Shown: positions 6,301 to 51,300, counted from the first letter of the stretch. The stretch is 64,000 bases of DNA from Asterias rubens (GCF_902459465.1 NC_047062.1:21948001-22012000), one strand, 5' to 3'. Made by a program: numbers and translations. The notes: generated from the letters alone by a model not told the origin.

Positions 6301-9300
6301 CTTACCAGCTCTTACCGTCCTGTACCACTACCTTACCCAACTCCTACTTCTCTGTACAAAATGTACCCCTAACTTACCAGCTCTTACCGTCCTGTACCAC
6401 TACCTTACACAACTCCTACTTCTCTGTACAGAATGTACCCCTAACTTACCAGCTCTTACCGTCCTGTATCACTACCTTACCCAACTCCTACTTCTCTGTA
6501 CCCCTTCCCAACCCCTTCCCCTACCCCTACATCCAAATCATATTTAATGTGTCCTCTTCGCCATCCTTATCACACAAGTCCCACCCGAAGATCTGTGTTT
6601 TTAGTCAGAGATGTCTGAATGTATCATGTCTGTTTTGTTTTGTAAATACTTGCAGGGTTGAAAAATGATCTCGTGGAAAGACTGTATAAGTTCTACCAAG
6701 ATCAAGAGCTTCAAAGTCAAGGTAAATATTTGTTTGGCTTCATAAAACACAAGAAGAAAAAAAAACAACTCGTCAAACTAGCAGTGAAGTTGTATTTTAT
6801 GTTTGTTTACAGGGAACAATTTCATCCAGCACTATTGCGTAGCAAAATCTTCAAAGAATTGGCGTATGATGAAGCTGACCCAAGTCGGTCAGACTTTCAT
6901 TGCTTCCCAAAGCTGCTATGCATGTACATTGTAAATTTAAATTACCGTATGATAATGCACATAGTATTTGCTGGCTTCAAATTAAAGTCAAGTCAATTTC
7001 AGATTTAAATTTAAACTTTAATTCATTAGGAACGTTAGCCAATTCCTACTCAGTTGAATTCAAATGTGTTTTTTTTGTAAGTCTGAAATTTGAACATTTA
7101 TTTTTTTGTTCAAGATGTTACGGCAGCTTCCTATTACTATTTGAATGTGAATAATGATCTTTGTTTTCTTCTTCTTTATTTTCCAGCTCACACTGAGCCC
7201 CAAGAGGCTCCTGGTAGTTCTCATCAAGAGGTAAGTCAAGAAATGAATCCTTACATCATTGATTCCTTCTATATATCCAAATGCCAAAGCAGTGTTCTCC
7301 ACAGACTGTTATTTAGGAGGGCGCAATGACGTAATCAAAATGGCCCCCGTCAATATGACTTATTATCAAAATGACGCCCATACATGACGTCATCGGGCAT
7401 GAAAGCAACAAATGCTTGGAAAAACATTTTCTTAAAAATAATGCTATAAATCCCGAACCCGACGACTGATTGACATCCATTTCGGTTGAAAAAATAAATC
7501 AAAACGTACAATTTGTTATGCCTATTTGTACTTTCCTGATGGGAACTATTGACTCATAGTGTCAGCAATGAACTTTCCAGTGTTTGACTTTATACTTATT
7601 ATTTAATCTTATCTTTGATTATTGTACACACATGTGCACTGAATTGCACTTTGCCTAAAGGTTCAATGTTTTCATAGATGCTTTGTGCGGTGAGATTCCA
7701 AATTACTCAAGCACATTGTTATTCATGTACATACCTGCATTTATCTGTTGTAGGGAGACAAGCTTGGTCACTATCAACTGTGTTAGTCTAACAAATTTTA
7801 AATTACACATATGTGTTCACAGGAAGAAGCCCCTTGCATGTCACCACCCCATGGGCTTCTCCAGCAACAGCAGCAGCAGCAGCTGATGTTCCAGCAGCAG
7901 CAACAACAGCAGCAGTTATTACATCAACAGCAAATCCTGGCGGAGCAGCAACGGCAGCAGCAGCTCCAAGAGCAGCACAGTATATTAGAACAACAGAAAC
8001 AGATGGTATTTGAGGAGCAACAAAGGCGGCGATTGGCGGAGCAGCCGCAGCAGCAGCAACAACAGCTTCATGAGCAGCTTCGAGTTCAACAGCTGGAAGA
8101 GCAGCAGCGACAGCAGGCCCTAGCTGACCAGGCCCATCAACAGCTGTTGCAAGAACAGCAGCAACAGCAGCTGTTGGAACAGCACCGCCTTCTGGAGCAA
8201 CAACGTCTCAAGCAGCAAGAAGAAGAAGAAAGACAGTTGATAATTGAGCAGCAGAAGGAAAAGGAGAGACACCATCAACAGCAACTTGAAGAACAGGAGC
8301 GTCAAAGGCAGATGATGGAAGATCAAATTCGCCGGCGACAGTTACAGGCCATAGAAGAGCAACGTCAACAGCAAAAGTTGCTGGAAGAGGAGAGACAAAA
8401 GGTTCTGATTGAAGAACAGCACCGACTTCTGCAGCAGCAGGAACTGGAAGAGCAGCAAAGACAGCAGCAGATGTTAGAGCACCAAAGACGACAGCAGCTT
8501 GTTGCAGAACAACAACGCATTCTTGAAGAACAGCGCCAGCAGCAGCTGATTGCAGAGCAGCACAGATTACTGGAAGAGGAACGACAGAGAGAAGAGGTGG
8601 AGAAGCAACAGCAGCTTATCATGGAGCAGCAGCGACTGATGGAGGAGCAGCGACTGATGGAGGAGCAGCGACTGAGAGAGGAGCAGCGACTGAGAGAGGA
8701 GCAGCGACTGAGAGAGGAGCAGCACCAGCAACAGGCTCTGGAACAGCAGCGATTGATGGAAGAGCAGCGACTGATGGAGGAGCAGCGACTGATAGAGGAG
8801 CAACACCAGCAACAGGCTCTGGAACAGCAGCGACGAAGGCAACAAGAAGCTGTTCAGCAGATGGAAGAGGAGAAGCGGAGGCAAGCAGTAATCCAGCAGC
8901 AAGAGGAGCAGCTACTCCGTGAAAAGCAACAGCAAGAGGCTGCAGCAAGACAAGAGGAGATCAACCGCGCAAAGCAAGCTGAGCTAGAAGCCCAACAGCT
9001 TGCAGCAGCAGCCGAGCTAGCAGCCAAGGAAAGGGAGGCTGAAGAGAGGGTCCTCGCTGAGCAGCAGGAGTTGATCGAGAGAGAGAAGCAGCGACTGCTG
9101 CAGCAGCAGCAGGAAAGAATCAGGCAGCGTCAGGAAGAGAAGTTGCGCCAAGATGAGGAAACGAGACAGAAGGTCCTTCAGCAACAGAAGATGCTTGAAG
9201 AACAGCAAAGGGCTGAGAAGCAACGCCAGGTAAGTTTTTCTCTGGTTGGATTCCTCTTGTTTTTGTCTCCGTTGTAGAAAAAATAGTTACTAAACTTATG

Positions 9301-22575: not shown

Positions 22576-25500
22576 TAAGTCATAAACACTGGAAAATGGC
22601 AGTGTTTGAGATTATTTAGTTGGAGTTTAGAAAACGAAAACAAGTTTCGATTTAGGAAGTTTTCCTATTTGTGTCTATCATGCCAAATGCTGTACTTGGA
22701 CTATAAAAACTTTGCTTCGGAATACATAAATGAAGAAATTATGTTGTTAAAATGTACTATTAATGTACCGTCTCAATAAGCTGGTTTGAAATAAAATGGT
22801 GAAGCCACACGTACTGAACAGGAATTTTAAATAACTGTTTTTAAGCTGGTTGTCGTCCTAGTGTTTCATGATGTTGAAACTCCTATATGGTGTTTGCACG
22901 TAGTTATTTGAATAGTCTGTTTATTTTCCACGTGGAAACATACGTTGGTCATTATTTTATTTCGAAGCGTGGGAGGGAAAAACGCCCTAAACGAATAAAG
23001 TGCGTTCAGCAGAGCGTAGCTTCATATTATGCCGAGAGTGGCCTGGTGCCATTCCATGTTGAAGCCCTGCAAATACGTGGTCTTTGTGGTAGGTTTTTGT
23101 TGCTGGTGCTTGCTTGCACAGACAATCAATCATTTTTTCCATATTTTGAAAGAATTTAATGAAGTTTTCATTTGTGCATTTTTCGTATTTCTCTCTATGT
23201 CAGTGTAAAGGCACTGGACACTATTGGTAATCACATCAATTAATGTTTAGCAAAAAAAAACCTTGGTAACGAGCAATGGAGAGCTGTTGATAGTATTACA
23301 CATTGTGAGAAACGGCTTCTATGACTGTAAGGCCTTTTATTAGGCATCTGAAAGCACACACATTTGTGCAAGAAGGGTGGTTTTCTTTGATTATTCTCTT
23401 GCATCTTCGATGACCAATTGAGTCCAAATTTTTACAGATTTGTTATGTTGTGCATGGGGCCTACCTGCGAGGGTAGAGGTTGATATTGTGTTGGAAAAAA
23501 ACTTTCGAAAAAAAAACAGCATTCCTGGGATGTATAATCCCAGGGAGCTGAGAAAGATTACAGGAATATTATTGGCAAAATTACCAGGGCACTGAAAAGC
23601 GCATTGATGCATGGAATTGTTAATTTGTCCTGATTGGAACCCACTTTGTTTGAAACCTCGCCATGTGTGGGAAATTACCCACCAAAGCACTCGATTCGTA
23701 TTCGGGATTTGATAAATCGAAGTCGTCACGTAGGCCCTATTATATGAAAAGGCTCAGAATGAAGTGCAATTAAACCTTTACTGCTCAGTTTTGATGAGTT
23801 TTTCTTGTGTCTGTGGTGCGGTTTTGCGAGGCACTGGACACGTTTGGTGATTACCCAAATCAGCATAAAAACTGTCTTGGTAACGAGCAATGGAGAGATT
23901 TGATAGTAGGCCTGTTGTAACACATTGTGAGAAACGACTCCCTTCGAAGTAACGTAGTGTTTGAGAGAGAGAGTTCATTATTCTCACTATAAAAAAAAAT
24001 AATCTGAGAAAGATTTCAGGCCCGAAGCATTTTTCCGGGCATCTGACAACAGGGTTATTTTTCTTGCATTATTTTCTTGCAACTTCGATGCCTAATTTTG
24101 AACCAACTTTTTTACAGATTTGTTTTTTTTGTGTGCATAAATGTTAGGATACCCCAAGTGAGAATACTGGTCTTTGACAATTACCAAATCGTGTCCAGTG
24201 CTAATGTATAGTGCCCGTTTGATTTCAGTCGCGGTAGGCCCCTACATCAAAATAACTGCCTTGCATTATATTATATTATATTATATTATATTAGATTATA
24301 ATGTCCAATATTAATCTACCGTAATAATAAATTCCATAATTGAAACCTCATCTGGAATCACAATGTACGTTTTATTAATTATGTGAACCTATGCATGGAC
24401 GCCAAAATCCACAAAGACTTCAATTAATATGCGTCGCGTGACATTTAGTTGTTTAATCAGTGTTAACAGCTCTTGTTTGTCAATCTCCATGTTATGGACA
24501 TTATATACCGTCACCCACGATGGCATGAGATTGAGTGAAAGCAGGTCAAAGTTTTGAGCCATTGGTGTATGTAGTGGAAATTTGTTGATTTTCAGCAATT
24601 TATGGGTTTTGTTTGTTATACAACACGTCAACTAGGTGGAAAAGGTTCTGCCATAAGTAATGTGTCCAAAGACTATGTATTAATCCTATAAATGTAGATA
24701 TACAGCAACACTGATAGCAAGAGCAAAATTTAATTTTCAAAAGCGTTTTTGTCTTCTTTTTTTCTTTAGAGATATCGCCGAAAATCATCTGGAGCGAATA
24801 CTGTCCATGCTGGAAGAATAATCCATAGGAACACACAATCTGATAAGCGTTACTGTCGTGATTATTCAAACTGGTCCATAAAAACTGTTTCTTTTCCAAT
24901 AAGCCCATACGCTAATGCCCCTAACCAAAGTTGTTTTTACTGCCATTAATTTAAAGAGTGGTTACCAAACGTAAGGCATTCCTTTTAATTAAATCCAATA
25001 ATAAATGAACCAAATTGGGTAGTGATGTGTGTATTATCAATATGGATGTGGCGAAAAGAGAACCCTTATTTTAGAATTTGGAAAACACACCGAATCTGAG
25101 TTTGCTATTTTAACTAATAGCACATTATTAATCTTAATATCTGCACTTTTGGGACCCCCCCCCCCCAATTCTTCTGACGAGTTTCTGTACCATGTCGTGA
25201 CTTGCCATTGATGGTTCCAATAAAAAGCGAACCCGGAAAATCGTTTAAAAAAAATATATAGCCATTATTTTGTTATAGGTTAGCGCTGAAAAAGACTGCC
25301 TCAACCCTTTGAGGAAGTATACGTTGAACAAAGGGATGGAGGGGGTCCATCAACCAAAACAAATGATGTCATATTTGACGGGGGGGGGGGGGGGTTTCTG
25401 GAAGTTTGCCGAGTTTGTTGTCCATGGGAACATTATTTATGCGTCTCCTGAAACTACAATTGCTATTGTTGTCAACGAACCCAAACACTTTTCTACGAGC

Positions 25501-26170
25501 TCATATTTTTTTTTTTTAGACGGATGAATACAACTTATAAATACAGGATTGAAAGGATGGGGTAAGAAGGTTGGACGTGAGGTTTTTTTTTTATGGTTCA
25601 TTTTGCAGTCTGCTTGGCGGGGGGAAACGTGTGTCTAGATGCACAACAAAACCACACTACGTCAGTGCACTAACGGTAACCGTGGCACTCCCATAAATGA
25701 TGACATCAAATAATAGCACACGGCAGGTGCGATGTCTGTTCGTCCTCCCGCCGTTGTGATTAAATAGTTCAGTGTAATCAGTCATGTACAGAATTGACAA
25801 CTTTTCATGCTTCAACTGTTCAACCCCTTCGTCTAAAAATAATTTTGCAAAACATGTTTCGAGTTTCCTCCATGTTAAAAGGATCTGTATATATGTTTTG
25901 TAATGACTATGAAAATCAATGTGAATAAAAACTAACTTGGTAGAAGTACAGCTGCAACTTTGTATGAGAAACTTATCATTACTGCAGTTATGGAAAAAAA
26001 TATCACTTGTAAAATTGTTTTTCCCCAATTTGAATCTGAGAAGCGTTACTGATGGTAACGTTTCTCAGATTGTGTATTCTATTAGCAGTGTGTTTTTGGA
26101 CATTAATTGCTCCCGATTTTTGACGATATCTCGACAACGCTACCACTTTTGAAAAGAAACCTTCACATGC

Positions 26171-26473
26171 TGAAGGCAGTGGACACTATTGGTAATTACT
26201 CAAAGTAATTATTAGCATAAAACCTTACTTGGTAACGAGTAATGGGGAGAGGTTGACAGTATAAAACATTGTGAGAAACGGCTCCCTCTGAAGTAACTCA
26301 AGTTTTCGAGAAAGCAACTTCGTGTGACACGGTGTTTTTTCTTTCATTATTATCTCGCAACTTCGACTACCAATTGGGCACAAATTTTCACAGGTTTGTT
26401 ATTTGATGCATATATTGAGATACAGCAAGTGAGAAGACTGGTCTTAATTACCAATAGTATCCAGTGTCTTTAA
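26171..26473. mobile_element. Kolobok-like TTAA MITE, family 1 (internally deleted copy)
   Basis: AAGGCAGTGGACACTATTGGTAATT ... TTACCAATAGTATCCAGTGTCTTTAA. Partial copies occur at ~50-114, 18437-18610, 23209-23420 and 23830-24200. Confidence 0.8.
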
Positions 26474-27729
26474 GGGTATCTCTACAATTACATTATGATT
26501 GATACGAACAGTATGCTCCAAAAACCGAACGTACACAATCTCTCACTGAATACAGGGCCGATGAAGAACAACAAGGGGTTATGCTGTTTAGGCTAAACAC
26601 AAAACAAGAAAAATAGACAACTCGAGCGAAGGTTTAACTTCTTGGTTATTTTTTTCGTAACAACATACATTGTTCGTCACAATGTCACTTTCTCTTTAGT
26701 ACAAAACAAGTAATATACAAATAACAGATCACAGAGGAGACTTATTATTATGAAAGACAGAAAATGTTACGTGAGTTCGTTTTTCAGTGCCTCGTTTGAG
26801 CTAAATGCATTTTTTTAAAGTAATTTAGCAAACACTTTTTTGACAGTATTTTGAATTATTTTAGGCCTACAAATAATGCGATGCGTTATCATAAAAGTCT
26901 GTAATACTCACTCAAATTATTATTAATGTAAGGGTTTGTTCTTCTCTAGACTAAGGAAATGAAATTGAACTTTAAAAAATACTCTGCTAAGAATGCTGAA
27001 CAGGTTGAGGAATGCAGAGCATCACAAAACAATAGTTTTCTGTGATTCGAACGGGGTTGGGACTTGAGTCAAGTCTAGGTCAGTGAGACCAGCATAGCAT
27101 GTTGTTTATCGCCAGAGACTGGATGTGGCAAAATGCTTTTGACCTACAAAGAACCCATGGTGATTTTTTTTCAAGTGTTTTATTTCTATTTTCTAGATTC
27201 TTGGTCCATAAAGCAGTTTGCCACAGCCAAACTCTCACTTTAAAGATAACTTGTAGGCGCCTATAAAAAAAAGGTGACAATCGGAACAGTGTTTTTTATT
27301 TTATATAGAATAAAAGTTACATCTATCTTAAGTCTACTTGCAATTCGTTGAGCTGTGTCATACAGCTCGAAATCTGCGTGGATGCTTCTACTGCCATAAA
27401 CGAAAAATATAGTCTCACTATGCCCGATCAGATTTATGTTTCTGTATTTGAGAGTTAACGTCGAAAAATCAACGTATCGTTAGTTCAAAGCGCTTAAACT
27501 ACCACCAACAATAGTCTCATTTTTTCCAACAAGTACAGTTCAAACAATCTGGTTACATACGTGGCTTATTTTTCTTCAAAGCAAATTAGTGATAATGATG
27601 ATAATAAAAATGCAAAAGATGGTTAGTCTTATCTCTGAAAACTGAGTTCGCGGTAAAAAAGAACTTCTGTCATCACGTGACAGTTATCAACTATCCGATT
27701 CTTCAAAATCCTAAAATATTGAGGGACTT

Positions 27730-27856
27730 TTGGGGACACTAAGAGGCGGCAGACTCACCGGGGGGAAACCATTGTTCTCGGTGATGTGCGCATGCTCAGA
27801 ACTACGAAAACAATGGAAATTACCTGGTAAGTCTGCTGCCACCTAGCGTTCCAAAG
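27730..27856. mobile_element. Hairpin MITE-like element
   Basis: TTGGGGACACTAAGAGGCGGCAGACTCACC pairs imperfectly with GGTAAGTCTGCTGCCACCTAGCGTTCCAAA. There is an inner inverted repeat CCATTGTTCTCG / CGAAAACAATGG. Confidence 0.7.
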
Positions 27857-28005
27857 TCTCACATTCATCCGCTTTTTCTCAGCCTCAATCTGATAGTCTG
27901 ATTTCATAGTTGGAAAGCAAGATTACTGCATCGTGATTTTTTTTAAAGAATCTTTACACTTTTCTAAAGGAACCCAGCTGCAGATCGCTCTCCGTCAAAT
28001 GCTGG

Positions 28006-31000
28006 CTACGGCCTGACGATGGACGCCAGGACACCAGACGCAACGATTACACAGGCTGAATAAACAACGTGGGCGGCTCCACCTGTCGAGAAGAACGCAA
28101 AAAAATACAAAAACTTCAAGATTGTGGGATGTGGAGCTCCATATGGTCTGAGTTTTTACCTAGAAGTTTATGAGTAGGATACCGTGGCGTAATTTCTCAC
28201 TCATATATTAAAAGACCTTTAGGTCTAAAGCCCTTTTGAGGCATCTGCCAGCACATGTACATTTTGTGCACCAATGTTTCGTCTTTCATTATTCTCTTGC
28301 AACTTCGATGACCACTTGAATTACAAATTATCACAGGTTGCTATGTATGCATTATTATATTGAAATAAATCTGAAACCTCCATTCATGTATCAGAGATCG
28401 ATCCAAGTGATCATGCTGCTATTGCCAATGCTATCAACAATCATCTGGCCAGTTTTTCCCAAGTGTAACAACCAATCAGATTAGATGAGCTACCGGCCTA
28501 TCTGCCAAGTAGCAGGCCACCTCCCCAGTTTCAACCGTGGGACATTTATGAGGATTTGAAGAGGGTGTCTGTTTCCAAAGCCGGGGGGCCTGACAATGTT
28601 CCTCAGAAGGTGTTAAAGGAATTCGCATACGAGCTCAGTTCCCCTGTGACTGACATCATTAACACCTCTCTCGTACAGGGCAGTGTTCCTAATCAATGGA
28701 AAATTGCAAATGTCATCCCTGTACCCAAACAGACACCCCCTTCAATTGAGAAACTTAGGCCAATTTCATTGACATCAACTCTAGCAAAAATTGCTGAAGG
28801 TCGTGTAGCCAACCATGTGCTAAAGTCAATCCAACCCCATGTTGATGACAGACAGTATGGTAACCGTAAGGGTATGTCAACCACACATTGCCTAATTGAT
28901 GTCTACCACCAATTGGTGTCAAAAGCTGAGAAACCTGGCAACATCAGTACTCTTGTACTAACTGATTTCTCTAAAGCTTTCGATGTTATTGATCACAACA
29001 TTGCTTTTTCTAGTCTTTTGAGCATGGGTGTGGCGCCCAATATTGTGCAGTGGGTGGTTGACTTCATTTCTGGTAGACAACGAAGAGTTAAATATAAACA
29101 AACCCTCTCCGATTGCATTACTTTAATGGGTGGTGTCCCACAGGGAACAATTATTTTTCTTTGTATCATCAACAGTGCCCAGGAGGAAGTCAGGGATACG
29201 GACGTCCATGCATGGAAGTATGTCGATGACCTGACATTGAGTGAGAGTAGAAGTTACGGCAGTCCAGGTACCATCCCAGACAGTTTGGACTCCTTGTATC
29301 AATGGACCATTGATACCAAACTGAAACTCCACCCATCAAAATGTCAGGTCATGCAGGTGTACTTCGGACGAAAACTCATCCCCGACGTGGATGTCCGTAT
29401 CTCTGACCAGAAACTCGCCATCGTGGACAAGGTCAAACTACTGGGGGTAATTATTGAACAAAATCTAAAATGGGAGGGCCAAGTAGACTCGATGTATAGT
29501 AAGGCCAACAGAAAGCTGTTCATGCTAAGGAAGTTGAAGGATGCTGGACTAGACGCCGAAGAACTCCTCACAGTATACAAAGGCTATATTCGCCCAGTCC
29601 TTGAATACGCAGCCCCTGTTTGGAATGCTGGCCTTACCCAGAAGCAGGTGAACCACCTCGAGAAGATCCAGAAGCGTGTATGTCACTACATCCTCTCTAA
29701 GGACTACACAACATACCACGATGCTTTGTCTATTCTTCAATTGGACTCCCTCCAGTCTCGAAGAAACAAACTCTGCCACCAATTTGCAGAGAAGGCAAGC
29801 ACTTCTGTGAGATTTTCGAGGTGGTTCCCTGCTTCTGTAAACAACTCATCTATGCAACTCCGCCAACGAGCACGGTTTGGTATGTTTCACTGCAACACCA
29901 AAAGATTCCAAAACAGCCCCTTACCCTACCTCACCAAGCTCCTGAACTCCTAAAACCATGTTAATATAATTGCTTAATTGTCTGGTCTTAAATGTATACA
30001 AATGTAGTGAACTGTAATGTTTGTACATATCTGGCAGGCCATTGCTTTTGTGATTTTTGTGATTTTATTTTTTTTATCAAATGTTCACTATGTATTTTCT
30101 ATTGTAAAGCTTTTTAATAACTAATGTTATATTTTTTAATTATTGTAAATTATGCCGCAATTCAGCGGTATGCTGCGATGGCATTTTTGAATAAATAAAC
30201 CAATAATTTAATACACACCAAGTGATAATTCAGGTCTTTGACAATTACCAAAAGGTATCCCACAGTGCCTTTAAGACTCGTCTAATCACATGCAGTATAT
30301 AGTCGAACTATAACAGTGTTAAAATTGTAGACCTACTTTCTGGGGTTGTGGTGTTCGAGGCGGCGGCCGTCGTCTGGGCGTCGGTAACTGGTGAGGTGTT
30401 GGCAGCGGCTTCGGTGGTTGCGGTGGTCGTTTCTTGACTAAGGACGCCTTGAATAAACACAATGCAGAACATCGCCACGATGAACACAATTACCTATTGT
30501 ACCGAACACACATCAAATAAAATCGGTTTCAATTGAAACACTTTGATAACACTTTGATTTTACTTTCTGTTTTTTTGTCTCACCCATCACCCAAAGTGTT
30601 TTTCTGCATTCAGCAGCAATACACCTGGTTGGCATTGCCGGGGGAAAAAAACAAGTTTGCCTCGATTGACGTCACGAACAGCGCCCTCTCGGGTCGGGGT
30701 CTACTCTTAAATTTGTAAATAACTGATTTTTTAAAACCTTAGCTAACTGTTTATTCACATTCCACTCATCAAAACACATATAGTAGTGACAAAAGCTTTA
30801 TTTTGAAAAAAATACCACTTCCAGGTGACTTTACAAACAGAAGTTCATGAGCTATTCAGTGAGCAACCACGTTTGTTTGAAATGTTCGGGTTCTACTTTT
30901 GCAAGCAAATAAAATTAATTTCAACCGATGCGCGTAAGTATACATGCTGGTGTAAAAGGAACACGTTGCCTTGGATCGGTCGAGTTGGTCTTTGAAAAGC

Positions 31001-32371
31001 GTTTGTAACCGTTTGTTATAAAATGCATATGGTTAGAAAGATGTTGTATTAAAAGTAGAATACAATGATCCACACAAACATGGCTCGAAATTGCACGGTT
31101 TTCCTTTTACCTCGTCGACTAACACAGTCGGCCATTTATGGTAGTAAAATGTTTGACTCCTATAAATGGCTGGCCGTGTTTGTTCGCAAAGTAAAATGAA
31201 AACCGTGCATTTTTAGGCAAATTTGTGTGGATCATTGTATTCTACTTTTAAAATATCTTTTTAAACCATATGCATTTCATAACAAACGGCTACACTATAA
31301 CGTCTATAACGCTTTTTGTAGACCAACTCGTCCGATCCAAGGCAACGTCTTCCTTTAATACTTTGGATGCGGACAGTTTTGACATTTTGAGGTTTTTATC
31401 CCAGCGAACGCAACTAAATAAATTAATTTGAATTTATCAAACAAACACGACCTTAAACATTTTCCTGAAGACGAGCGGAGTATACTGTTCGAAACGTCGA
31501 GACCACACCCGGCTCTTTTCAGAGCCAACACTCCCAAACAAAAGGTATTCAATACATGGTTGTTATACCCGCAAGTTTACTAGTATGGTTAATTATTTGA
31601 TGCTATATATTTTTTATTTATTGGTATACTTTCATAAAAATAAAAGAAACCCGTTAAAACAAATGTACAGTAAGCCAACCGATAGGTTGAATTGCAATGG
31701 TAAAATTCATTAACATTTCTTTAAAAGTAGCTTAACACAAACACAACTGTTTTATAAGATGTTATCATTCATAACAAACATTGGAAGGTTAATATTGAAC
31801 GCCCAAAATAATCGACAGGTGTTTATTTTCAATCTGAAAGCCTTCAAGTCTTTGGACACTTTTACATTGAAACCATGCTCATTATACTGTACATTAAAAC
31901 ATGCCAGTGTAAGCATCAATCATTTGGTTTATCGCTACAGCGGGACGGTTTGAATTAAGGTTGTCGTCAACAAATCAAGGGCAAAATTAGATAACATAGC
32001 ATTCAAAACAAAACACTAAAAAGATGTGCGCCAATCATAATTTGGTTGTTGTAGTTCTTGTTGTCGGGTTTTTGGTTTTGGTTTTGTTTTTTGGTTTTTT
32101 TTGGGGGGGTGGGGTGGGGGGTGAAGGAAAATTTACATATATGCACCTTACAGTTGTACCGACTTGAATTACAAATAAAGTTACATTTTGCAAATTACAG
32201 GTAACTAAGGCGATTTGGAAAACAATACAAATAAGGTGATCCATCACACTACAACACAATAACACAAACCGATAGAAAACCCACTAATCCGCTCCTGTAT
32301 ATGGTTAAAAAAAAATTGGTGCTTTTTGTGGGGAAAAATAAAATACAAACAAAAATACGTACCGTCTTCAT
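28006..32371 (-). CDS. Unnamed 80-aa secreted, Thr/Ala-rich, predicted GPI-anchored glycopeptide (CD24/CD52-like architecture)
   Basis: Exons 32371-32363 (ATG AAG ACG|GTACGT), 30493-30337 (AATAG|...GAA A|GTAGGT) and 28082-28006 (TTCTCGACAG|GT...TAG); phases 0 and 1 fit, 243 nt total. Protein: MKTVIVFIVAMFCIVFIQGVLSQETTTATTEAAANTSPVTDAQTTAAASNTTTPESGAAHVVYSACVIVASGVLASIVRP. Confidence 0.85.
28368..30213 (+). mobile_element. 5'-truncated non-LTR retrotransposon (CR1/L2 group, Rex1/Babar-like) with reverse transcriptase ORF 28556-29953
   Basis: RT motifs GPDNVP, RPISLTS, QYGNRKGMST, LTDFSKAFDVIDH, GVPQG and KYVDD; LINE C-terminus (YIRPVLEYAAPVW). 3' UTR with AATAAA at 30190. No endonuclease domain. 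In-frame TAA at 28466. Confidence 0.93.
30956..31358. mobile_element. Kolobok-like TTAA MITE, family 2
   Basis: ~35-bp TIR AAGGAACACGTTGCCTTGGATCGGTCGAGTTGGTCT / AGACCAACTCGTCCGATCCAAGGCAACGTCTTCCTT, ending in TTAA. Confidence 0.85.
31461..31502 (+). ncRNA. Minimal type I hammerhead ribozyme motif (Penelope-like, dimer type), intact core
   Basis: TTTC-CTGAAGA-C-GAGCGG-AGTATA-CTGTTC-GAAAC-GTC-GAGA: CUGANGA and GAAA core, 6-bp stem II, 4-bp stem I, palindromic ACGU in place of stem III. Activity is untested. Confidence 0.75.
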
Positions 32372-33521
32372 GATGATGATGATGTGTGGGTGTACTTTTT
32401 CCTATTTATGTCGACAAAAAAGGTTGTATTTCCTCGTAGCTAGGAGATCCTGATTATGGTTGTTAGTTAATATTGCCAGAAGTATAAATGACCCCCAATG
32501 CTTCAGACCCAGCGTTTTATTCAAACAGCCAGTTATTCTACCGTCATTCCTCCCTCTGTAGGTCGAAGCTATATTGATATTTTGTTGTGATTGGATACTG
32601 TCATAAAACATTTTAATACACGTAGTCTAGTAGGCTACGCAACATTGAAGTAATGTTAACGGAGAGCATTGACATAATTTCAAGTTTATGCATTTTATGG
32701 GCGATTCCCGTTAATGTGTGTGTACTCGAAACAGCAAACTCAATTACGACAACACCGCAGTTATTTGATTCTTATGCTCGTCCTTTCTGCCCTTCTAAAT
32801 GTATGTGGATTCTTCTCTCCTTTCATAAACAATAATTAATGCCCTGACGTTTCGACATTTGCAAAGTCTTTCTCGAAGGCTTTTAATGGAAATGGTATCG
32901 AATTCGTTTTGTTTTCATAAAGTAAAATGGGCCCAACTAGGTTGGGCATGTTCTGATTTTAGAAGTCATTATTTTCTAAAACATGAAAAGTTGGAAAGTT
33001 GGCCATTGTTAACACTTTCAGACGTATACGGTCAACATACAACTTCATTGCTAAAACAATGGGCCAAACATTTCTTTGGTCAGAGGAAAATACACGTTTG
33101 ATCCAATTCCACTGACGTCATCACCAGAAACAAAAATTGTTTGCGCCATTTTTTGAGAGTCAGTTTCACCACTCGGTGGTCGGTACGCATTTGAGGCGGT
33201 ACCTGTTGTGGGGTGCAAGTGGCACATGGCGAATGCGCTTGGTAAATGAGGAGGAACATCGCGCCTTTTTTTTTGGGGGGGGGGCTTTGTTCTTGCTTTG
33301 TGACAGAAACCCCAGATGACAGAAACCCTTCTTCCATGATAAGTGTTTTGGGTTCGTGTACATGCACTATCAATCCCAGTACACGGGACCTACGGCATAA
33401 TGTCCCATCCGAAGGAAAAGTCAATTACCTTGCTCAACTTAAACAACTAGCCTTTTGATCAGAGAAACACCCGAGTTTGGGGCTCCAGCTAAGCAAAGCA
33501 GATTTTCCGGCTTCACACAAT

Positions 33522-40100: not shown

Positions 40101-43100
40101 TTCGATACCCTTAAGGGGCAAAATGTCAACATAAAAATATCCTAGGAAATCTTTTTAAGAAAAAATGGTCTGTATGGAACGTTTTGGCTCATTCCTCAAA
40201 AGGGACATGAACTTGACATTTTGTATGTCGACAAAGAATTTTTCCTTGGAATGTAGAGACCCATTTAATTAGTTGTTGAAATCCAATGACGTCATGTTTT
40301 AAACACCGCTCTGAGAAAGTTGGGAATATGAACCGAAACATACCCGTATAGGCCCATTTTCCACTGGCTAGTCCATACACATGTTAAAGGCTTTTTACTC
40401 TACTTCATTTATTGTATCTTTCTGGTAATAAAACCCAAGATCCTAAGAAACAAAATTCTGGTTAGTGCCAAATCATGACCTATTTTGTGTGTAGGGCCCC
40501 CTCTTGACAGTAGCAGTTCCAGGGTGCCGAGACAGTGGTGAAAATACAGTTTTTTCAATCTCTCCCTTAGATTGGTACATCTTTAGTCATTTTCGTAAGG
40601 TAAATCATAAAGTTCTTTGTTTTAAAGTAGCATGGTGACAGTAACAGGCAAGGCATCATTTGAAGTTAATAATAAGGATCTTAAATCACCAGAAACTGTG
40701 ACTCAATTATTGAAATGAAACCAGGAAAATGGGACTAAAATAGGTTGCAAGACTGTGATCTGGGATCCTAACCAAGGTCCTACATGTATGTGTCCAAGGT
40801 TTTAGACAAGGAAGCATTCCACTCTGCCAACTTGATCCACTGCCATTTGCATCAATTACTATTATTTTGAAACTTTGCATGGTGGAAATAAGATATAGAA
40901 GGGTTTGCGGTAACACCATGTAATGACTATCTCTAAATGAGTTGGGGTGGTTCTGAAAAGAACCGTTGGTTAACTCGACGTTTCGATCAGTATGCTCTGA
41001 TCGTCTTCTGGAGAAAGAAGACAATCAGAGCATACTGATCGAAACGTCGAGTTAACCAACGGTTCTTTTCAGAACCACCCCAACTCATTTAGATATAGTT
41101 ATTAAACCATTCTATATTTTGAAATGTTTGTTCATATTCAGATAATGTGCCGTTGTACAAAGAGACACTAACAGCTGTATACTTGTACATAGACTTTGAA
41201 CCTACTTCTCTCCACGTGGCACACAACAAAGACACGCTGCCTTTTGTTTTATTATAGATGACTAAGGGTTGACACACAGAAATAACAATGCTATTTATCA
41301 TCCTAAGAGGGTGGGGTTGTCATTTACAACAGAGGGGGTGAGAACAGTACATGGAATAGAAGGAGGCTACTTAGGTTTTCAATGTGAACTCATGAGAGTA
41401 GATGGGTAATTTGAAAGGATTTTGAAAACGTTGTTTTGGTTTTGCTTTACTTTTTATATTAAAAAATTAAAAAGAAAGAAAAGAAAACAAGAAAGAAAAT
41501 AATGTACATGTATTTGTAAAAAAAATTGTTTTTAAATAATTTAAGAATTAATAAAGTTAATACATAAAATTTCTGAATTTTGAATCTTTAGTATTTTTGG
41601 CCTAGTATCAAATGCTACTCGCTGGAATTGTGAATACTACAATTTGAATCTAGCATCCCTCCCTGGATATCTCTTAAATCAAAGCTGGCCCCTTTGAGTT
41701 TATTTGGAAGTAGATAAATACAATTTTATGTCCAAAAGAAGAAACAACTGATGGAACAGATGAACCCCTCTGTTGTGTAGTTGTACCAGCCTTTTTTTTA
41801 TTGTCCCTATTATTATTTGACAGGTTGTAATAAATGTACGTATTCATCGGAAGTGTGTTCCACTTGGCCATGACCCAATGAGAGTAATAAACACCCATTG
41901 AGAGAGCAAGGTGTGATCAAGGACTTGCATAGTCTGGTGAAAGAAATTGTTTAAAGGCAGAGGACACTATTGGTAATTACTTAAAATAATTATTAGCATA
42001 AAACCTTACTTGGTAATGATTAAAGGCAGTGGACACTATTGGTTATTACTCAAAATAATTTGTAGCATAAAACCTTTCTTGGTGACGAGTAATGGGGAGA
42101 GGTTGATAGTATAAAACACTGTGAGAAACAGCTCCCTCTGAAGTGCCATAGTTTTTGAGAAAGAAGTAATTTTCCACGAATTTGATTTCGAGACCTCAGA
42201 TTTAGAATTTGAGGTCTCGAAATCAACCATCTAAACGCACACAACTTCGTGTGACAAGGGTGTTTTTTCTTTTATTATTATCTCGCAACTTCGATGACCG
42301 ATTGAGCTCAAATTTTCACAGGTTTGTTATTTTATGCATATATATGTTGAGATACACCAACTGTGAAGGCTAGTCTTTGACAATTACCAAAAGTGTCCAC
42401 TGCCTTTAATGGGGAGTGGTTGATAGTATAAAACATAGTGAGAAACGGCTCCCTATAAAGTGACGTAGTTTACGAGAAAGAAGTAATTTTCCACGAATTT
42501 GATTTTGAGACCTCAAGTTTAGAATTTGAGGTCTCGAAATCAAGCATCTGAAAGCACACAGCTCCATGTGACAAGGGTGTTTTTTCTTTCATTGTTACCT
42601 CACAACTTCAACGACCAATTGAGCTAAAATTTTCACAGGTCTGTTCTTTTATGCATCCACCCAGTGAGAGGATGTGTCTTTTAAAATTACCAAACGTGTC
42701 CATTTGTCTTTAACTCTTTGGTGCGCTAGAACACATTCAAATTGGACGCTGATAAACGGTCTTAAAACCTACAACACCTATTCTATATACTGCCCTCATT
42801 CTCATGCCCTCATTCTGTTGTTCAGAGCGATGTCAATAGGGGGCCCTAATTAAATTTTGAGAAAAACATGGATGAACGAGATTTGTTTAAAACAATAAAA
42901 TTAATCTGTGCACCAAAGGGTTAAGACAACCGACAGGGTCGGTTGTGACAGGGTCGGTAAACATTCATGAAATAAAGTGATTAAATGAACTGTATTTCTG
43001 AATGAGTTTCAATGTAAATCAAACAACCAAGAGCACGTTTATTTTTGTTGGATGAGACAAATAGCCCCCTCTTGTGGAAGGCAGGCACAATAGAATTAAC

Positions 43101-47927: not shown

Positions 47928-48277
47928 TAAGAGCAACTATAAATATAAATATTGAGAGGGAACTTGCCGGTACAACCATGAGTAAAAAAACTCTTTTCAA
48001 GGAGTGGTGGCTCTGAAAAGAGACGGTTAGGTCTCGACGTTTCGAACAGTATACTCTGCTCCTCTCCTTCCCGCCCAAAAGTGCATCCCTCCAGTCATAC
48101 ATAAGCTCCACCACCTCCAGTAGTCCAGCATTCTCCTGAAGACGAGCAGAGTATACGATTCGAAACGTCGAGACCAAACCGGCTCTTTTCAGAGCCACCA
48201 CTCCTTCAAAAGAGTTTTTTGACCCATGGTTGTACCCGCAAGTTCACTATTAACATTTATATTTATAGTTGCTCTTA
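47928..48277. repeat. Long inverted repeat (~133-bp arms, ~83-nt spacer) with a hammerhead motif at 48132-48173, downstream of the ESF1 stop codon
   Basis: TAAGAGCAACTATAAATATAAAT...CTCGACGTTTCGAACAGTATACTCTGCTC pairs with GAGCAGAGTATACGATTCGAAACGTCGAG...ATTTATATTTATAGTTGCTCTTA. Confidence 0.9.
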
Positions 48278-48398: not shown

Positions 48399-51300
48399 TC
48401 AGTGGACTTTCTGACGTTTTAACTTCTGTGCCTTGAACTGGTTTGTTTTGTTCTTAACAGACTTGACAAGCATTGAAAGTTCCGCCCCTCTGCTACTCTG
48501 TTTTGAGACATCACTCTGGGATGAAGCCTTGGGTGTGGCATCGGGCACTGTCTTTGATGTGACGGTAGAGACCTTTCTTGCAGTGTCCAATCTTCTCTGA
48601 TCTTCCTTCTTTCGTTGAACCTGTCGCTCGGCCTGGAGAGCCTCTGTCGCTTTGGTCTTCTTAAACTGGGGATCGGACGGATCCATTGCATACAGGTGAG
48701 ATGAGAACATCGCCTGAAAGCGTTGATCCTTCACGTCGATTTCAAAGTCGTCCTCAAACTTGGCTGTCTCCTCCTGTTGGAGTTTCCTCTTTTTCTTCCT
48801 CGACATCTTCTTGCCTTGGTTCTGCTCGTTCTCCATGATGGCCTTCAGGTTGAAATGTTTCTTGCCGTCTTCGTCGTCCATAAACAGTAGTTCAAGCTCC
48901 AACTAAAAAGATTTCAACAAGAGTAGAACACCCAACCATTATTTTAAAAAGATATTCTCAGGTGAATTTGTTTCCAATAAGAGACATTCAAGTGAGCCGT
49001 TTGTGGTTAAGCCCGGTTCATACTTCCTGCAAATGCGCAATGATTTTTTACTTCACAGGGCTGTTTTCACTACGAATGTTAATTTATTCCTTGCGAATTA
49101 TTCCTTGCAAGACTGTGAAGTCAATGTATCGGTGTCAATGATACAGAATTTCAAACCATCTCCTACCTGCTTCTGTTTGATCCTTTCTCGTTCTTCATCA
49201 TCGATCTCTGCCTCTTGTTTCTTGCCTTTTGTCTTCTTACTTTTCTTCTTGATACCTTTAAAGAAATAAGCAGCTTGTGATTAGAATCCGAGCTGCAAGC
49301 AATCTATCAAGAGTTCTTCTCATTCATGGAAGAAATACCAAAGGTCCGAGATGTTGTAATGGTTGAGAGACCCAAGGAATTAAAAAACTCATTATAACTC
49401 ATTGAGAAAACAGTTCACAAACAAGGAAACATGATGCAAGTAGCTAAGTTTTAATGTTATTCGTCTCGCACAGTTAGTGGCTCAAGGAAGATGTAAAGGA
49501 CTTTGGGGAGGAATGTGACTGGAACTTACCTTCAACCCCATCTTCTCTCAGAGCATCTTTGAAGAACGGATCATTGAGGTCTACTCCGGTAGGAAGTTCA
49601 TCGTCACTAAAGGCGCCATCGGAGTGCTCCTTTGCTTCGTTCAATTGCTGAAAAAAAAACAAGTAAATAAGTTGAGCATCACCATATAACAATAATCGTG
49701 GCTTCTTATAAAGCGCTCGAATCCGTCACTTAGTGACGCTCAGGTGAAACCAGGAACCAGGAAACACTCTGGCAAACCCCTTCTCTTTATGATATTAGTG
49801 CACTGGATTCTTTTACGTGTATTACACAACATACAGAACTTACACCTAACGTCCTATCAGATAACGGAAGGTGTCTTGCTTAAGGACACAAGTGCCACAA
49901 CCGGCACTTGAATCGAAACACCAGCACTTGAGTCTGCCGCTCTTATCCACATGTCTTCATTGGAGTTTCTTCCTTTTGCAAAGGACCTGATTATATTCTT
50001 GTTTTGTTTTGGGTTTTTCTCTCAACAAAATGCACAGCTTTTCTTACCTGTTTCTTCAGCCCCTTTAGTTTCTTTTTCTTGTCCTTCTTCTTCTCAAGGA
50101 AATTCTCCCAAGGCGTGGACTCCGAAGACTTTTCAGATTTCTTCTTGACAAGTTCCTCAGTTGCATCTTTCAAGCCTGTCATTGCAAAAAAAGATAATAA
50201 TTATAATTCCAATAACGTTTACATTTTGTGAAATACCATAACAAATTCATTTGTCTGTCTAAAAGACACTCCGGGCGCAGAAGAGATGCAGAAGTAAGTG
50301 TGTCTACAATGAGTTACATCAATGAAACTCTATAGCACAAAAATACGTTTTCAGATGAGTTTTGAAGCTGGTATATATGTAGTGACTTATCGAAGTACAT
50401 TCCATAGTGCATGGCCAGAATGTGAGGAGGATCAGGTTCTTTTGTAACATCAACTTGCAGAAATATGTATTCTTACATCTCACATGGTTCCACATCCTTT
50501 GCAGGGCTATGCTAATCACGTAAACAGGTTCAGTCTGGTCAGCACCTAATTTGCATGGATATGCTAATTACCTAAAAAGGTTCAGTCTGGTGTGCACCTA
50601 ATTTGCATGGATATGCTAATTACCTAAAAAGGTTCAGTCTGGTGTGCACCTAATTTGCATGGATATGCTAACAATCTTACCCGGTTCCCAAGTGATCTCC
50701 ATCTCCATTTGTTTATCCCTGTCCGTCTGCTGCTGACCCTTGTCTACATCTTTCAGGAGGGCTCGGTATTTAGCAATCTGCTGATCTTCACTTAAGGGCT
50801 TTTTGACGTGCTCTTTCGTCTCCCGATTTTGTTCTGGTTCTTTCTTTTCCTCAAAATCGAACTCCCAATTATCTGCGAGGTTAAATTGAAAGGGAAAAAA
50901 GAGATTTGGGGATTATTAAATCCGGTTCCAGCTCCAAGAAAACAAAGTCACCGGTCATCGCCCCCATCATGTCACTTCCACTCTCTTTATCTTCTTCTAT
51001 TTCGAGTGGTGTCCTTGATCAATGATGTTACAATAGAGGTGTTCCCAGATCCCTCTGTCCCATAGCATGTAGATATTTCATCTGCTGTCACAAGCCCAGT
51101 GTCTGCTGGCGCAATATAGTAAAATTCAATCTGAATGGATTGAAGGCTTGTGTCACTGATGACTGATTGTTTTTCATTAGTAAATTATGTTGCCATGAAT
51201 AGTCGTGAGTGACACAATTGGTTCACCTAGCAGGTAGTCGCGACTATTATTGTAGTAGTTGTGGCTAGTAGCTGAAAAACGATAGTCGACTAAGCAATCA

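What the first reader, a model, noticed from the sequence alone, without database searches (positions are those of the whole stretch)
28006..32371. Hidden three-exon gene for an 80-aa GPI-anchored glycopeptide (CD24/CD52-like design)
Seen: no exon appears in the ORF track, yet three phase-compatible exons with strong splice sites give a signal peptide (MKTVIVFIVAMFCIVFIQGVLS). A ~34-aa Thr/Ala-rich stalk with two N-glycosylation sequons (NTS, NTT) follows, then a small-residue omega region (S-G-A) and a hydrophobic tail ending at the stop. Known: this architecture is that of vertebrate CD24 and CD52, tiny heavily glycosylated GPI-linked surface antigens; I do not claim homology. Inference: an undescribed cell-surface glycan-display peptide, possibly immune, gamete or mucosal. 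Its introns hold a LINE, MITEs and the intact hammerhead.
Basis: partly seen in the sequence, partly recalled or inferred. Interest (0 to 1): 0.75.

Follow-up and report, generated by a model that had tools for sequence, protein, structure and literature searches.

The report
Starfish CD24-like mini surface glycopeptide gene
A real, spliced and strongly transcribed three-exon starfish gene encodes an 80-residue precursor laid out like vertebrate CD24 (secretion signal, about 34 sugar-bearing residues, lipid-anchor-type tail); it has one detectable relative, in another sea star, and no match to any named family.

Summary
The minus-strand exons 32371-32363, 30493-30337 and 28082-28006 join into an 80-codon reading frame with GT..AG introns. 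Both junctions are present in RNA-derived contigs: one in all four runs laid, the other in three plus a loose end in the fourth. One contig crosses all three exons.

The only homologue in two very large protein searches is a 78-aa ORF on an intronless cDNA contig from Pisaster ochraceus body wall. The two hydrophobic ends are under strong purifying selection: tail dN/dS about 0.03, with 20 of 21 residues identical. The Thr/Ala-rich middle diverges fast and is polymorphic.

There is no Pfam match, including to the CD24 model. A protein language model nevertheless puts the full-length homologue nearest the CD24 cluster, and only when the tail is included.

Best reading, at about 0.6: a lineage-restricted, GPI-anchored, mucin-type glycopeptide that is convergent with CD24/CD52. 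The main rival is a type I membrane micro-protein with a two-residue cytoplasmic tail. GPI attachment, glycosylation and tissue of expression are untested.

The "intact hammerhead" in intron 1 gets no Rfam support. The scan's own notes hold no earlier finding of this gene on other DNA.

The parts
32363..32471 (-). Exon 1: at least 100 nt of 5'UTR plus the first three codons (ATG at 32371-32369; CDS 32371-32363)
   Evidence: A contig of run X8 reaches 32471 and joins 32363 to 30493. Depth is zero in 32516-32712. There is no upstream ATG and an in-frame TAG lies upstream. The 5'UTR aligns to the Pisaster cDNA from 32441.
30494..32362 (-). Intron 1 (1869 nt, GT..AG, phase 0). It holds a MITE-like palindrome, the claimed hammerhead and a histone-stem-loop-like repeat.
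   Evidence: Joint 30490->32360 (cut +3), skipping 1869 nt with ends CT..AC on the + strand, is seen in X2, X8 and X11. In X1 a loose end at 30494 reads into exon 1.
30337..30493 (-). Exon 2 (157 nt): the rest of the signal peptide and the whole Thr/Ala-rich stalk, residues 4-55 plus the first base of codon 56
   Evidence: About 0.37 of the sampled words of a 401-nt stretch around it are held by RNA runs, which matches the exon's share of that stretch. A divergent allele lies at 30408-30431.
28083..30336 (-). Intron 2 (2254 nt, GT..AG, phase 1). It is a high-copy repeat interrupted by an antisense LINE fragment.
   Evidence: Joint 28080->30335 (cut +2), skipping 2254 nt, is seen in all four runs.
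28006..28082 (-). Coding part of exon 3: codon 56 (bases 2-3) to the stop. It encodes the small-residue region (S)GAA and the hydrophobic tail ending in RP.
   Evidence: The last 21 residues are 20/21 identical to Pisaster despite 10 synonymous differences.
27013..28005 (-). 3'UTR, the part covered by reads (about 1 kb)
   Evidence: Contigs 27845-28080 (joined to exon 2), 27217-27813 and 27013-27836 have depths of the same order as the exons. The stretch is 72% identical to the Pisaster cDNA over 27201-27712.
25052..27012 (-). Probable further 3'UTR, or a longer isoform, inferred only from colinearity with the 2.7-kb Pisaster cDNA contig. It includes a 46-nt block at 26664-26709 with 45 of 49 aligned positions identical.
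   Evidence: Colinear blastn blocks 26942-26813, 26709-26664, 25872-25614, 25242-25193 and 25117-25052. No reads were laid here.
28556..29953 (+). LINE fragment in intron 2, antisense to the gene: a 465-aa ORF with a reverse-transcriptase domain. The insertion spans roughly 28315-30232.
   Evidence: Pfam RVT_1 E=4e-23. Joints 28314->30215/30233/30234 in high-copy contigs show other copies of the flanking repeat that lack the LINE.
30950..31361 (.). MITE-like nested palindromic repeat in intron 1
   Evidence: Inverted repeats I1-I4, 77-89% complementary. Word depth is very high in RNA runs, so there are many copies elsewhere.
31461..31548 (+). The claimed hammerhead (31461-31502) followed by a histone-3'-stem-loop-like hairpin (31506-31548). 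Both sit in a high-copy repeat and are not part of the gene's function.
   Evidence: No hammerhead family at E<=1. RF00032 scores 29.8 bits, below its gathering score of 34.

Best explanation
This is a genuine, strongly transcribed protein-coding gene of a sea star. Earlier agents of the scan call the genome Asterias rubens. Its mRNA is mostly 3'UTR, and its 243-nt ORF makes an 80-residue pre-pro-peptide.

Inferred pathway:
1. The N-terminal hydrophobic signal takes the short chain into the ER and is cut after Ser22 (V-L-S | Q).
2. The C-terminal 23-24 residues act as a GPI-attachment signal. They are replaced by a GPI anchor at Gly57 or Ser56 (S-G-A-A).
3. The remaining peptide of about 34-35 residues is acidic and has no Lys or Arg in the reference allele. 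It is 35% Thr and 24% Ala. It would be N-glycosylated at the conserved N50-T-T (and at N35-T-S in this species) and densely O-glycosylated on up to 15 Ser/Thr.
4. The product would be a tiny lipid-anchored sialomucin-like molecule whose function lies in its glycans and charge: glycocalyx or anti-adhesive coat, a self marker or lectin ligand.

This would explain why only composition and one sequon are conserved in the middle, while the two targeting signals are conserved.

Shown: exons, splicing, transcription, coding constraint, the layout, and the lack of any family match. Inferred: the cleavage sites, the GPI anchor, glycosylation, surface location and role.
For: - Splicing and transcription: both junctions, and a contig that spans all three exons. 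Exon 3 is held by 13 runs of at least 7 studies.
- Coding constraint against the Pisaster orthologue: whole CDS dN 0.24 / dS 1.13; signal 0.11/1.05; tail 0.023/0.80; middle 0.49/1.79. The start codon is the same, with no upstream ATG in either species.
- GPI rules from PMC7125958: the omega residue is small, omega+2 is small, and the signal runs 20-30 aa from omega+1, with a spacer followed by a hydrophobic stretch reaching the C-terminus. Here S56-G-A or G57-A-A fits, 23-24 residues follow, the spacer is AHVVYSA and the hydrophobic run is CVIVASGVLASIV plus RP. G-A-A is conserved in Pisaster.
- The tail is only marginally hydrophobic. The best 19-residue window sums to +2.4 to +2.6 kcal/mol on the Hessa translocon scale, against -2.0 for the N-terminal signal (scale values from memory). 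That is typical of GPI signals and unusual for stable membrane anchors.
- A language-model search puts the full-length homologue nearest CD24 (0.90, 167 of 256 features) and then plant arabinogalactan peptides, which I recall as GPI-anchored glycopeptides. Without the tail the CD24 score falls to 0.52.
- Dimensions match CD24.
Against: - No GPI predictor (NetGPI, PredGPI, big-PI) or experiment could be run.
- The spacer is short and not very hydrophilic.
- The tail ends in Arg-Pro. A 21-residue span followed by a basic residue is also what a stop-transfer anchor looks like.
- 20 of 21 tail residues are identical although synonymous sites differ in 10 of 21 codons. That is tighter than a signal that is simply thrown away would seem to need.
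Ser56 itself is therefore not essential, and Gly57 is then the candidate.
- Only one of the two sequons is conserved.
Confidence: 0.6

Rival explanations
1. A type I single-pass membrane micro-protein. The signal is cleaved, the glycosylated stalk faces outward, and residues 58-78 stay as a transmembrane helix with a two-residue cytoplasmic end (Arg-Pro). The helix itself would be functional, for example packing against a partner through its small-residue faces (S71-G72-x-x-A75-S76).
For: - The tail is the most conserved part of the protein: dN/dS about 0.03, 20/21 identical, only Cys66/Phe differs.
- It is 21 residues long with mean Kyte-Doolittle hydropathy about 2.0 (my sum over residues 58-78; 9-residue windows).
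- It is followed by a conserved basic residue.
- Small-xxx-small motifs are present in the sequence.
Against: - Summed translocon-scale free energy is positive, +2.4 to +2.8 kcal/mol for 19-21 residues.
- A cytoplasmic part of only two residues is very unusual for type I proteins, and is the hallmark used to recognise GPI signals (own knowledge).
- A conserved small-residue G-A-A lies just before the tail.
- The language model groups the full-length protein with GPI-anchored glycopeptides.
- From memory, the CD24 and CD52 signals are also better conserved than their mature peptides.
Confidence: 0.25
2. A secreted, unanchored small mucin- or glue-type peptide. The hydrophobic C-terminus would be a pro-segment or aggregation motif, and the product would be released into mucus, cuticle or adhesive secretions.
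For: - Weak sub-threshold similarity to the Drosophila New_glue family: 18-21 bits against a cut-off of 31.
- Exon 2 alone groups with secreted mucin-like glycoproteins.
- The Pisaster cDNA comes from body-wall and epidermal samples.
Against: - A hydrophobic stretch reaching the C-terminus cannot stay soluble unless it is removed, and the known removal route is GPI transamidation.
- The New_glue match covers only the signal and the Thr-rich part, and it is below threshold.
Confidence: 0.08
3. The transcript works mainly as RNA, through its long conserved 3'UTR, and the small ORF is incidental or only weakly translated.
For: - The CDS is less than 10% of a transcript of about 2.7 kb or more.
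- The 3'UTR is 72% identical between the two sea stars over about 500 nt, while synonymous sites are near saturation (dS about 1). It also holds a 46-nt block with 45 of 49 aligned positions identical.
Against: - The ORF shows clear protein-level constraint, dN/dS 0.03-0.11 at the ends.
- It starts at the first AUG with A at -3, has no upstream AUG in either species, and keeps the same start, stop and layout in both species.
- UTR conservation fits regulation of a coding mRNA equally well.
Confidence: 0.04

Closest known systems
CD24 (vertebrate heat-stable antigen; Pfam PF14984)
   Same: The precursor length is the same (80 aa). The layout is the same: ER signal, a mature peptide of about 33-35 residues rich in Ser/Thr, and a C-terminal signal of about 21-24 residues. 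Two N-glycosylation sequons sit at nearly the same positions (N35/N50 here, N36/N52 in CD24). The mRNA is dominated by a long 3'UTR (for CD24, from memory). CD24 is the nearest cluster in the language-model search.
   Different: Neither orthologue matches the Pfam CD24 model. The atlas score shares 167 features, just under the 170 that most true family members reach, and it drops to 0.52 when the tail is left out. There are three coding exons here, against two in human CD24 (from memory). The stalk is Thr/Ala-rich and acidic. GPI anchoring and Siglec-type ligands are untested. No intermediate relatives were found in any other animal.
CD52 (CAMPATH-1 / epididymal HE5)
   Same: A very small GPI-anchored glycopeptide whose function lies in its glycan and anchor (PMC7125958). 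From memory, its signal sequences are better conserved between species than its mature peptide, which is the pattern seen here.
   Different: The CD52 mature peptide is only 12 residues with a single N-glycan. There is no sequence similarity, and it did not appear among the atlas neighbours.
Plant arabinogalactan peptides (AG peptides, e.g. Pfam AGP40)
   Same: Short precursors of about 60-80 aa with a signal peptide, a short heavily O-glycosylated Ala/Ser/Thr/Pro-rich core and a GPI signal (layout from memory). They are the second named group in the atlas search: 16 hits, score 0.78.
   Different: They come from a different kingdom and use a different glycosylation chemistry (hydroxyproline arabinogalactan). 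There is no homology.
Trypanosomatid small surface mucins (e.g. T. cruzi TSSA / TcMUC group)
   Same: Small Thr-rich GPI-anchored mucins with conserved N- and C-terminal signals and a variable, polymorphic central region (PMC2193624 and PMC2691823, abstracts listed). The same pattern of conserved ends and variable middle is seen here.
   Different: Those are large multigene families of a protist. Here a single copy is seen in the window, and there is no sequence relationship.

Membership tests
CD24 family (Pfam PF14984) | Significant match to the family profile | tested here: not met
   hmmscan of the window peptide (E<=0.1) and of the Pisaster orthologue (E<=10) lists no PF14984 hit.
CD24 family (Pfam PF14984) | Precursor of about 80 aa: ER signal, mature Ser/Thr-rich peptide of about 30-35 aa with N-glycosylation sequons, C-terminal GPI signal | tested here: met
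   against PMC8347636. This is a feature of design and not proof of descent.
CD24 family (Pfam PF14984) | Grouping with CD24 by sequence-derived features | tested here: inconclusive
   The top atlas cluster is CD24 (0.90) but with 167 shared features, below 170, and a low recognition value of 1806. With exon 2 alone CD24 falls to rank 15 at 0.52.
CD24 family (Pfam PF14984) | Orthology shown by intermediate relatives or conserved gene neighbourhood | tested here: not met
   An exhaustive HMMER search of 1.84 billion representatives finds only the query itself plus low-complexity hits. Other features seen in the window (histone stem-loops, a NUC153-domain ORF, a scan note naming CEP15) give no link to the CD24 locus. 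Synteny was not analysed formally.
GPI-anchored proteins (general class) | Cleavable N-terminal ER signal peptide | tested here: met
   The n-region is MK, the h-region is 15 hydrophobic residues, and the c-region is Q-G-V-L-S with small or uncharged residues at -3 and -1. In Pisaster the c-region is A-N-G | T. This rests on rules only; SignalP was not available.
GPI-anchored proteins (general class) | Small omega and omega+2 residues, with a C-terminal signal of 20-30 residues from omega+1 | tested here: met
   S56-G-A or G57-A-A, followed by 24 or 23 residues. G-A-A is conserved in both species. Rule from PMC7125958.
GPI-anchored proteins (general class) | Hydrophilic spacer (about 10 residues) then a hydrophobic stretch (about 20) that ends the protein | tested here: inconclusive
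   The spacer is 7-9 residues and only moderately polar (H, Y, S). The hydrophobic run is 13-15 residues and is followed by Arg-Pro.
GPI-anchored proteins (general class) | Positive call by a trained predictor, and PI-PLC release | not testable with these tools
   No NetGPI, PredGPI or big-PI, and no bench work.
Mucin-type O-glycosylated domains | Ser/Thr-rich, Pro/Ala-containing disordered stretch in a secretory-pathway protein | tested here: met
   The stalk has 12 Thr, 3 Ser, 8 Ala and 2 Pro in 34 residues. Actual glycosylation cannot be tested here.

The most novel reading that the evidence does not exclude
The gene is a true, highly diverged orthologue of vertebrate CD24. In that case the 80-residue GPI-glycopeptide 'self' marker would date back to the deuterostome ancestor, and echinoderms would have a CD24-lectin recognition axis. 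The matching precursor length, segment lengths and sequon positions (N35/N50 against N36/N52) would then be inherited and not convergent.
Probability: 0.07. Interest if true: 0.8.

Novelty: new member of a known kind. Interest (0 to 1): 0.45.

Why it matters
Tiny GPI-linked glycopeptides such as CD24 and CD52 are major surface antigens and lectin ligands in vertebrates. They are almost invisible to standard annotation and proteomics. ORF finders miss the split reading frame, and homology searches fail on low-complexity cores. A mature peptide without Lys or Arg also gives no tryptic peptides.

This locus shows that an echinoderm has an abundant transcript of exactly that design. It appears to be missing from public protein sets: the exact sequence is not among about 15 billion proteins.

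If the anchor and glycans are confirmed, the gene would provide three things:
- a candidate cell-surface marker for starfish tissues, which the field lacks (PMC13409769 abstract);
- an independent example of convergent evolution of the minimal glycan-display scaffold;
- a test case for why the targeting signals, and not the displayed peptide, are the conserved parts.

Its divergent alleles in the mature region are worth a population-level look.

Tried and rejected
1. **Search with the spliced peptide.** I used the Pisaster orthologue P0001 instead. I did not send the spliced peptide to any other remote tool afterwards; structure prediction was skipped for that reason and because the protein is mostly disordered.
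2. **More homologues.** A profile search of 5.8 billion proteins and exhaustive HMMER over 1.84 billion representatives gave nothing beyond P0001. The two other hits are low-complexity stretches of proteins of 778 and 987 aa.
3. **Paralogues in the window.** Local tblastn found only compositional matches to an Ala/Thr-rich region at 7.8-9.1 kb. Read in the frame of that match, the region is full of stops.
4. **Pfam.** Only sub-threshold matches appeared: New_glue, DUF1459 and Dpy19 for the window peptide and New_glue and Trp_oprn_chp for P0001. I rejected them as signal plus low complexity.
5. **Rfam.** Nothing relevant at the gathering scores across the window, nor at E<=1 over 24300-33000. 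There is no hammerhead, and the MIR859 hit is just the MITE palindrome.
6. **Literature.** Searches for an echinoderm CD24-like or GPI mucin found none. The accession search only identified the Pisaster virome study.
7. **Positive selection on the stalk.** Not supported by the two-sequence estimate (dN/dS 0.27, with saturated dS and an uncertain alignment).
8. **Extra exons or a larger protein.** Rejected on the contig evidence and the in-frame upstream stop.
9. **Human or mouse CD24 typed from memory.** I did not use such sequences for a pairwise or profile comparison.
Full report

Yes. On the minus strand the sequence reads ATG AAG ACG | GTACGT at 32371-32363. The next acceptor is ...acaatag | GTA at 30493. 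The next donor is ...CCA GAA A | GTAGGT at 30337, and the last acceptor is ...ctcgacag | GT GGA at 28082. The stop TAG is at 28008-28006. Joined, the three pieces give 243 nt in frame and an 80-residue product.

I laid Logan contigs of four public runs on 27000-32900.
- The joint 28080->30335 (ambiguous by two bases, so 28082/30337) is present in all four runs.
- The joint 30490->32360 (so 30493/32363) is present in three runs. In the fourth it appears as a loose end at 30494 whose letters are the reverse complement of exon 1.
- Both skipped pieces end CT..AC on the + strand, which is GT..AG on the minus strand. That fixes the direction of the gene.
- One 294-nt contig covers 32471-32360, 30490-30335 and 28080-28055. 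A 421-nt contig joins exon 2 to 27845-28080.

No other well-formed joint enters or leaves these exons. The 28314->30215/30233/30234 joints belong to a high-copy repeat whose other copies lack the LINE.

The 5'UTR has no ATG and has an in-frame TAG upstream of the start. The stop lies inside a continuous exon. The refuting case "extra exons make a larger protein" is therefore not met.

Word depth of the exon contigs is high, about 800-1200 in X2 and X11, against 3-15 for the LINE in the intron. Exon 3 is held by 13 runs from at least 7 studies. These include a second, related organism label with a partial share of the words. Exon 2 lies in a 59-aa ORF, which is why a 60-aa ORF track shows nothing.

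**2. Relatives and origin**

A search of 5.8 billion proteins found one homologue, P0001. It is 78 aa, E=4e-14, and 58% identical by BLASTP or 67% in the MAFFT alignment. A profile of the pair and an exhaustive HMMER search of 1.84 billion representatives with P0001 added nothing.

P0001 sits uninterrupted on two contigs, L001 and L002. One is from SRR11931172, an RNA-virome library of a Pisaster ochraceus body-wall lesion margin (PMC7699681). These contigs lack both introns, so they are cDNA.

They are colinear with the window from 32441 to about 25052, at 69-75% identity in most blocks. This includes about 500 nt of 3'UTR at 72% and a 46-nt block at 26664-26709 with 45 of 49 aligned positions identical.

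Earlier agents of this scan call the genome Asterias rubens. I did not verify that, but a Pisaster orthologue is consistent with it.

The exact 80-aa sequence is absent from a collection of about 15 billion proteins. The gene therefore appears not to be annotated as coding anywhere public.

**3. Is it coding?**

Codon-level comparison with Pisaster gives these estimates:

| Region | dN | dS |
|---|---|---|
| Whole CDS | 0.24 | 1.13 |
| First 18 codons | 0.11 | 1.05 |
| Last 21 codons | 0.023 | 0.80 |
| Stalk (middle) | 0.49 | 1.79 |

In the last 21 codons there are 10 synonymous differences and 1 replacement, Cys66/Phe. For the stalk the alignment is uncertain and dS is saturated.

Start, stop, layout, the NTTTP sequon and G-A-A are all shared. 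This rules out an incidental ORF. The 3'UTR is more conserved than synonymous sites, so it probably carries regulatory elements. Rfam finds no known element there.

**4. Anatomy of the product**

- **Residues 1-22:** a classical signal (MK, 15 hydrophobic residues, Q-G-V-L-S).
- **Residues 23-56:** 12 Thr, 8 Ala, 3 Ser, 3 Glu, 1 Asp and no basic residue. Sequons sit at N35 (this species only) and N50 (both species).
- **Residues 56-59:** S-G-A-A.
- **Residues 60-78:** H-V-V-Y-S-A-C-V-I-V-A-S-G-V-L-A-S-I-V, followed by R-P and the stop.
- **Exon structure:** intron 2 splits codon 56, so exon 3 encodes exactly the small-residue site plus the tail.

**5. Mechanism**

The layout meets the published GPI-signal rules: small omega and omega+2 residues, and 20-30 residues from omega+1 made of a spacer then a hydrophobic stretch reaching the C-terminus (PMC7125958). 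Omega would be S56 or G57.

In run X1 the contigs across the exon 2/3 joint carry T or C in place of A at 28081. That turns codon 56 from AGT (Ser) into AGA or AGG (Arg) (my reading of the joint table). If these are alleles, Gly57 is the better omega candidate.

On the Hessa translocon scale (values from memory, simple sum) the best 19-residue C-terminal window is +2.4 to +2.6 kcal/mol in both species. The N-terminal signal of the window protein scores -2.0. The tail is therefore marginal as a stable membrane span, as GPI signals usually are.

A protein language-model search with P0001 returns the CD24 cluster first (0.90, 167 of 256 features). Plant arabinogalactan peptides follow. With exon 2 alone, lacking the tail, CD24 drops to 0.52 and generic secreted mucin-like proteins lead. 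The resemblance is therefore one of whole architecture, and the tail is read as part of it.

CD24 itself is an 80-aa precursor with signal 1-26, a 33-aa mature peptide, sequons N36 and N52, and GPI signal 60-80 (PMC8347636). I therefore commit to a GPI-anchored, heavily glycosylated mini-mucin, with probability about 0.6.

Because the precursor is only 80 residues, ER entry is probably post-translational (Sec62/63-dependent). This follows from established knowledge about short secretory precursors and is an inference.

**6. The main doubt**

The tail is conserved at 20 of 21 residues, ends in Arg-Pro, is 21 residues long from A58, and carries small-xxx-small motifs. A retained transmembrane helix with a function of its own is a serious rival, at about 0.25. 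From memory, the CD24 and CD52 signals are also better conserved than their mature peptides. I could not confirm this in the papers available.

**7. Variation**

In run X2 a second 100-nt contig over 30362-30461 differs at 8 positions. Seven of these are listed, all within 30408-30431, at about 40% of the depth. The seven listed changes turn QETTTATTEA into QDPPAATTEN. These are either divergent alleles or a close paralogue. Together with the fast interspecies divergence, this shows that the displayed peptide is free to change, or is driven to change, while composition is kept.

**8. Membership**

The Pfam CD24 model does not match either orthologue. No intermediates exist in the databases searched. 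I file this as a new, lineage-restricted family of a known kind, the minimal GPI-type glycopeptide. It is not a CD24 family member. True orthology remains possible at about 0.07.

**9. The intron contents**

- **LINE:** confirmed (RVT_1, 4e-23; antisense). It is nested in a high-copy repeat.
- **MITE-like palindrome:** confirmed at 30950-31361.
- **Hammerhead at 31461-31502:** no Rfam hammerhead family matches at E<=1. By eye the CUGAAGA...GAAAC core has a C-C mismatch at the base of stem II and no convincing stem I. Directly next to it lies a histone-3'-stem-loop-like hairpin (31506-31548, 29.8 bits).

**10. Limits**

- There is no tissue information, because the runs are coded.
- Contigs carry no strand.
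- No reads were laid below 27000.
- No GPI, signal or O-glycosylation predictors were available.
- Only two orthologues are known.

Noticed in passing
window 40925-40969 (-), 41056-41102 (+), 48176-48220 (+): Rfam finds three histone 3'UTR stem-loops at or above the gathering score. The first two face each other. They coincide with the stretch (40921-41104) that another first-stage note reads as a 'perfect palindrome of two hammerhead arms'. Two convergent histone 3' ends look like the simpler reading.
   Followed up: partly
window 31461-31548 (+): The claimed minimal hammerhead is not matched by any Rfam hammerhead model at E<=1. It abuts a histone-stem-loop-like hairpin (GGCTCTTTTCAGAGCC; 29.8 bits, gathering 34). 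The whole piece belongs to a repeat with very high word depth in RNA runs.
   Followed up: partly
window 26664-26709 (-): A 46-nt block in the probable 3'UTR has 45 of 49 aligned positions identical to the Pisaster cDNA, while the surrounding UTR is about 70-75% identical. It is a candidate regulatory element. In the Pisaster Logan contig, the contig ends about 38 nt after it. No Rfam match.
   Followed up: partly
window 28182-28378 and 30152-30348: The two flanks of the LINE fragment are halves of one high-copy element. Contigs in all four runs join 28314 to 30215-30234 directly. The LINE therefore inserted into an older repeat inside intron 2.
   Followed up: partly
window 7811-9277 (+): A 488-aa ORF lies in a locally GC-rich (0.49), strongly AT-skewed stretch. 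It has an Ala/Thr/Gly-rich repetitive translation and no convincing Pfam match. It may be an exon of a low-complexity protein or a simple-repeat region.
   Followed up: no
window 27769-27866: A short stretch inside the 3'UTR shows 'opposite strands' joints and very high depth in three runs. It is a small inverted or high-copy repeat, and it breaks the assembled transcript contigs there.
   Followed up: no
window 453-514 (+): A tRNA-like match (RF00005, 32.6 bits, model positions 6-65 of 71). It could be a tRNA-derived SINE head or a truncated tRNA gene.
   Followed up: no
window 48399-48902 (-) and 54503-55063 (-): ORFs with a NUC153 domain (E=4.5e-11) and a weak PB1 match. They are probably exons of neighbouring genes.
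   Followed up: no
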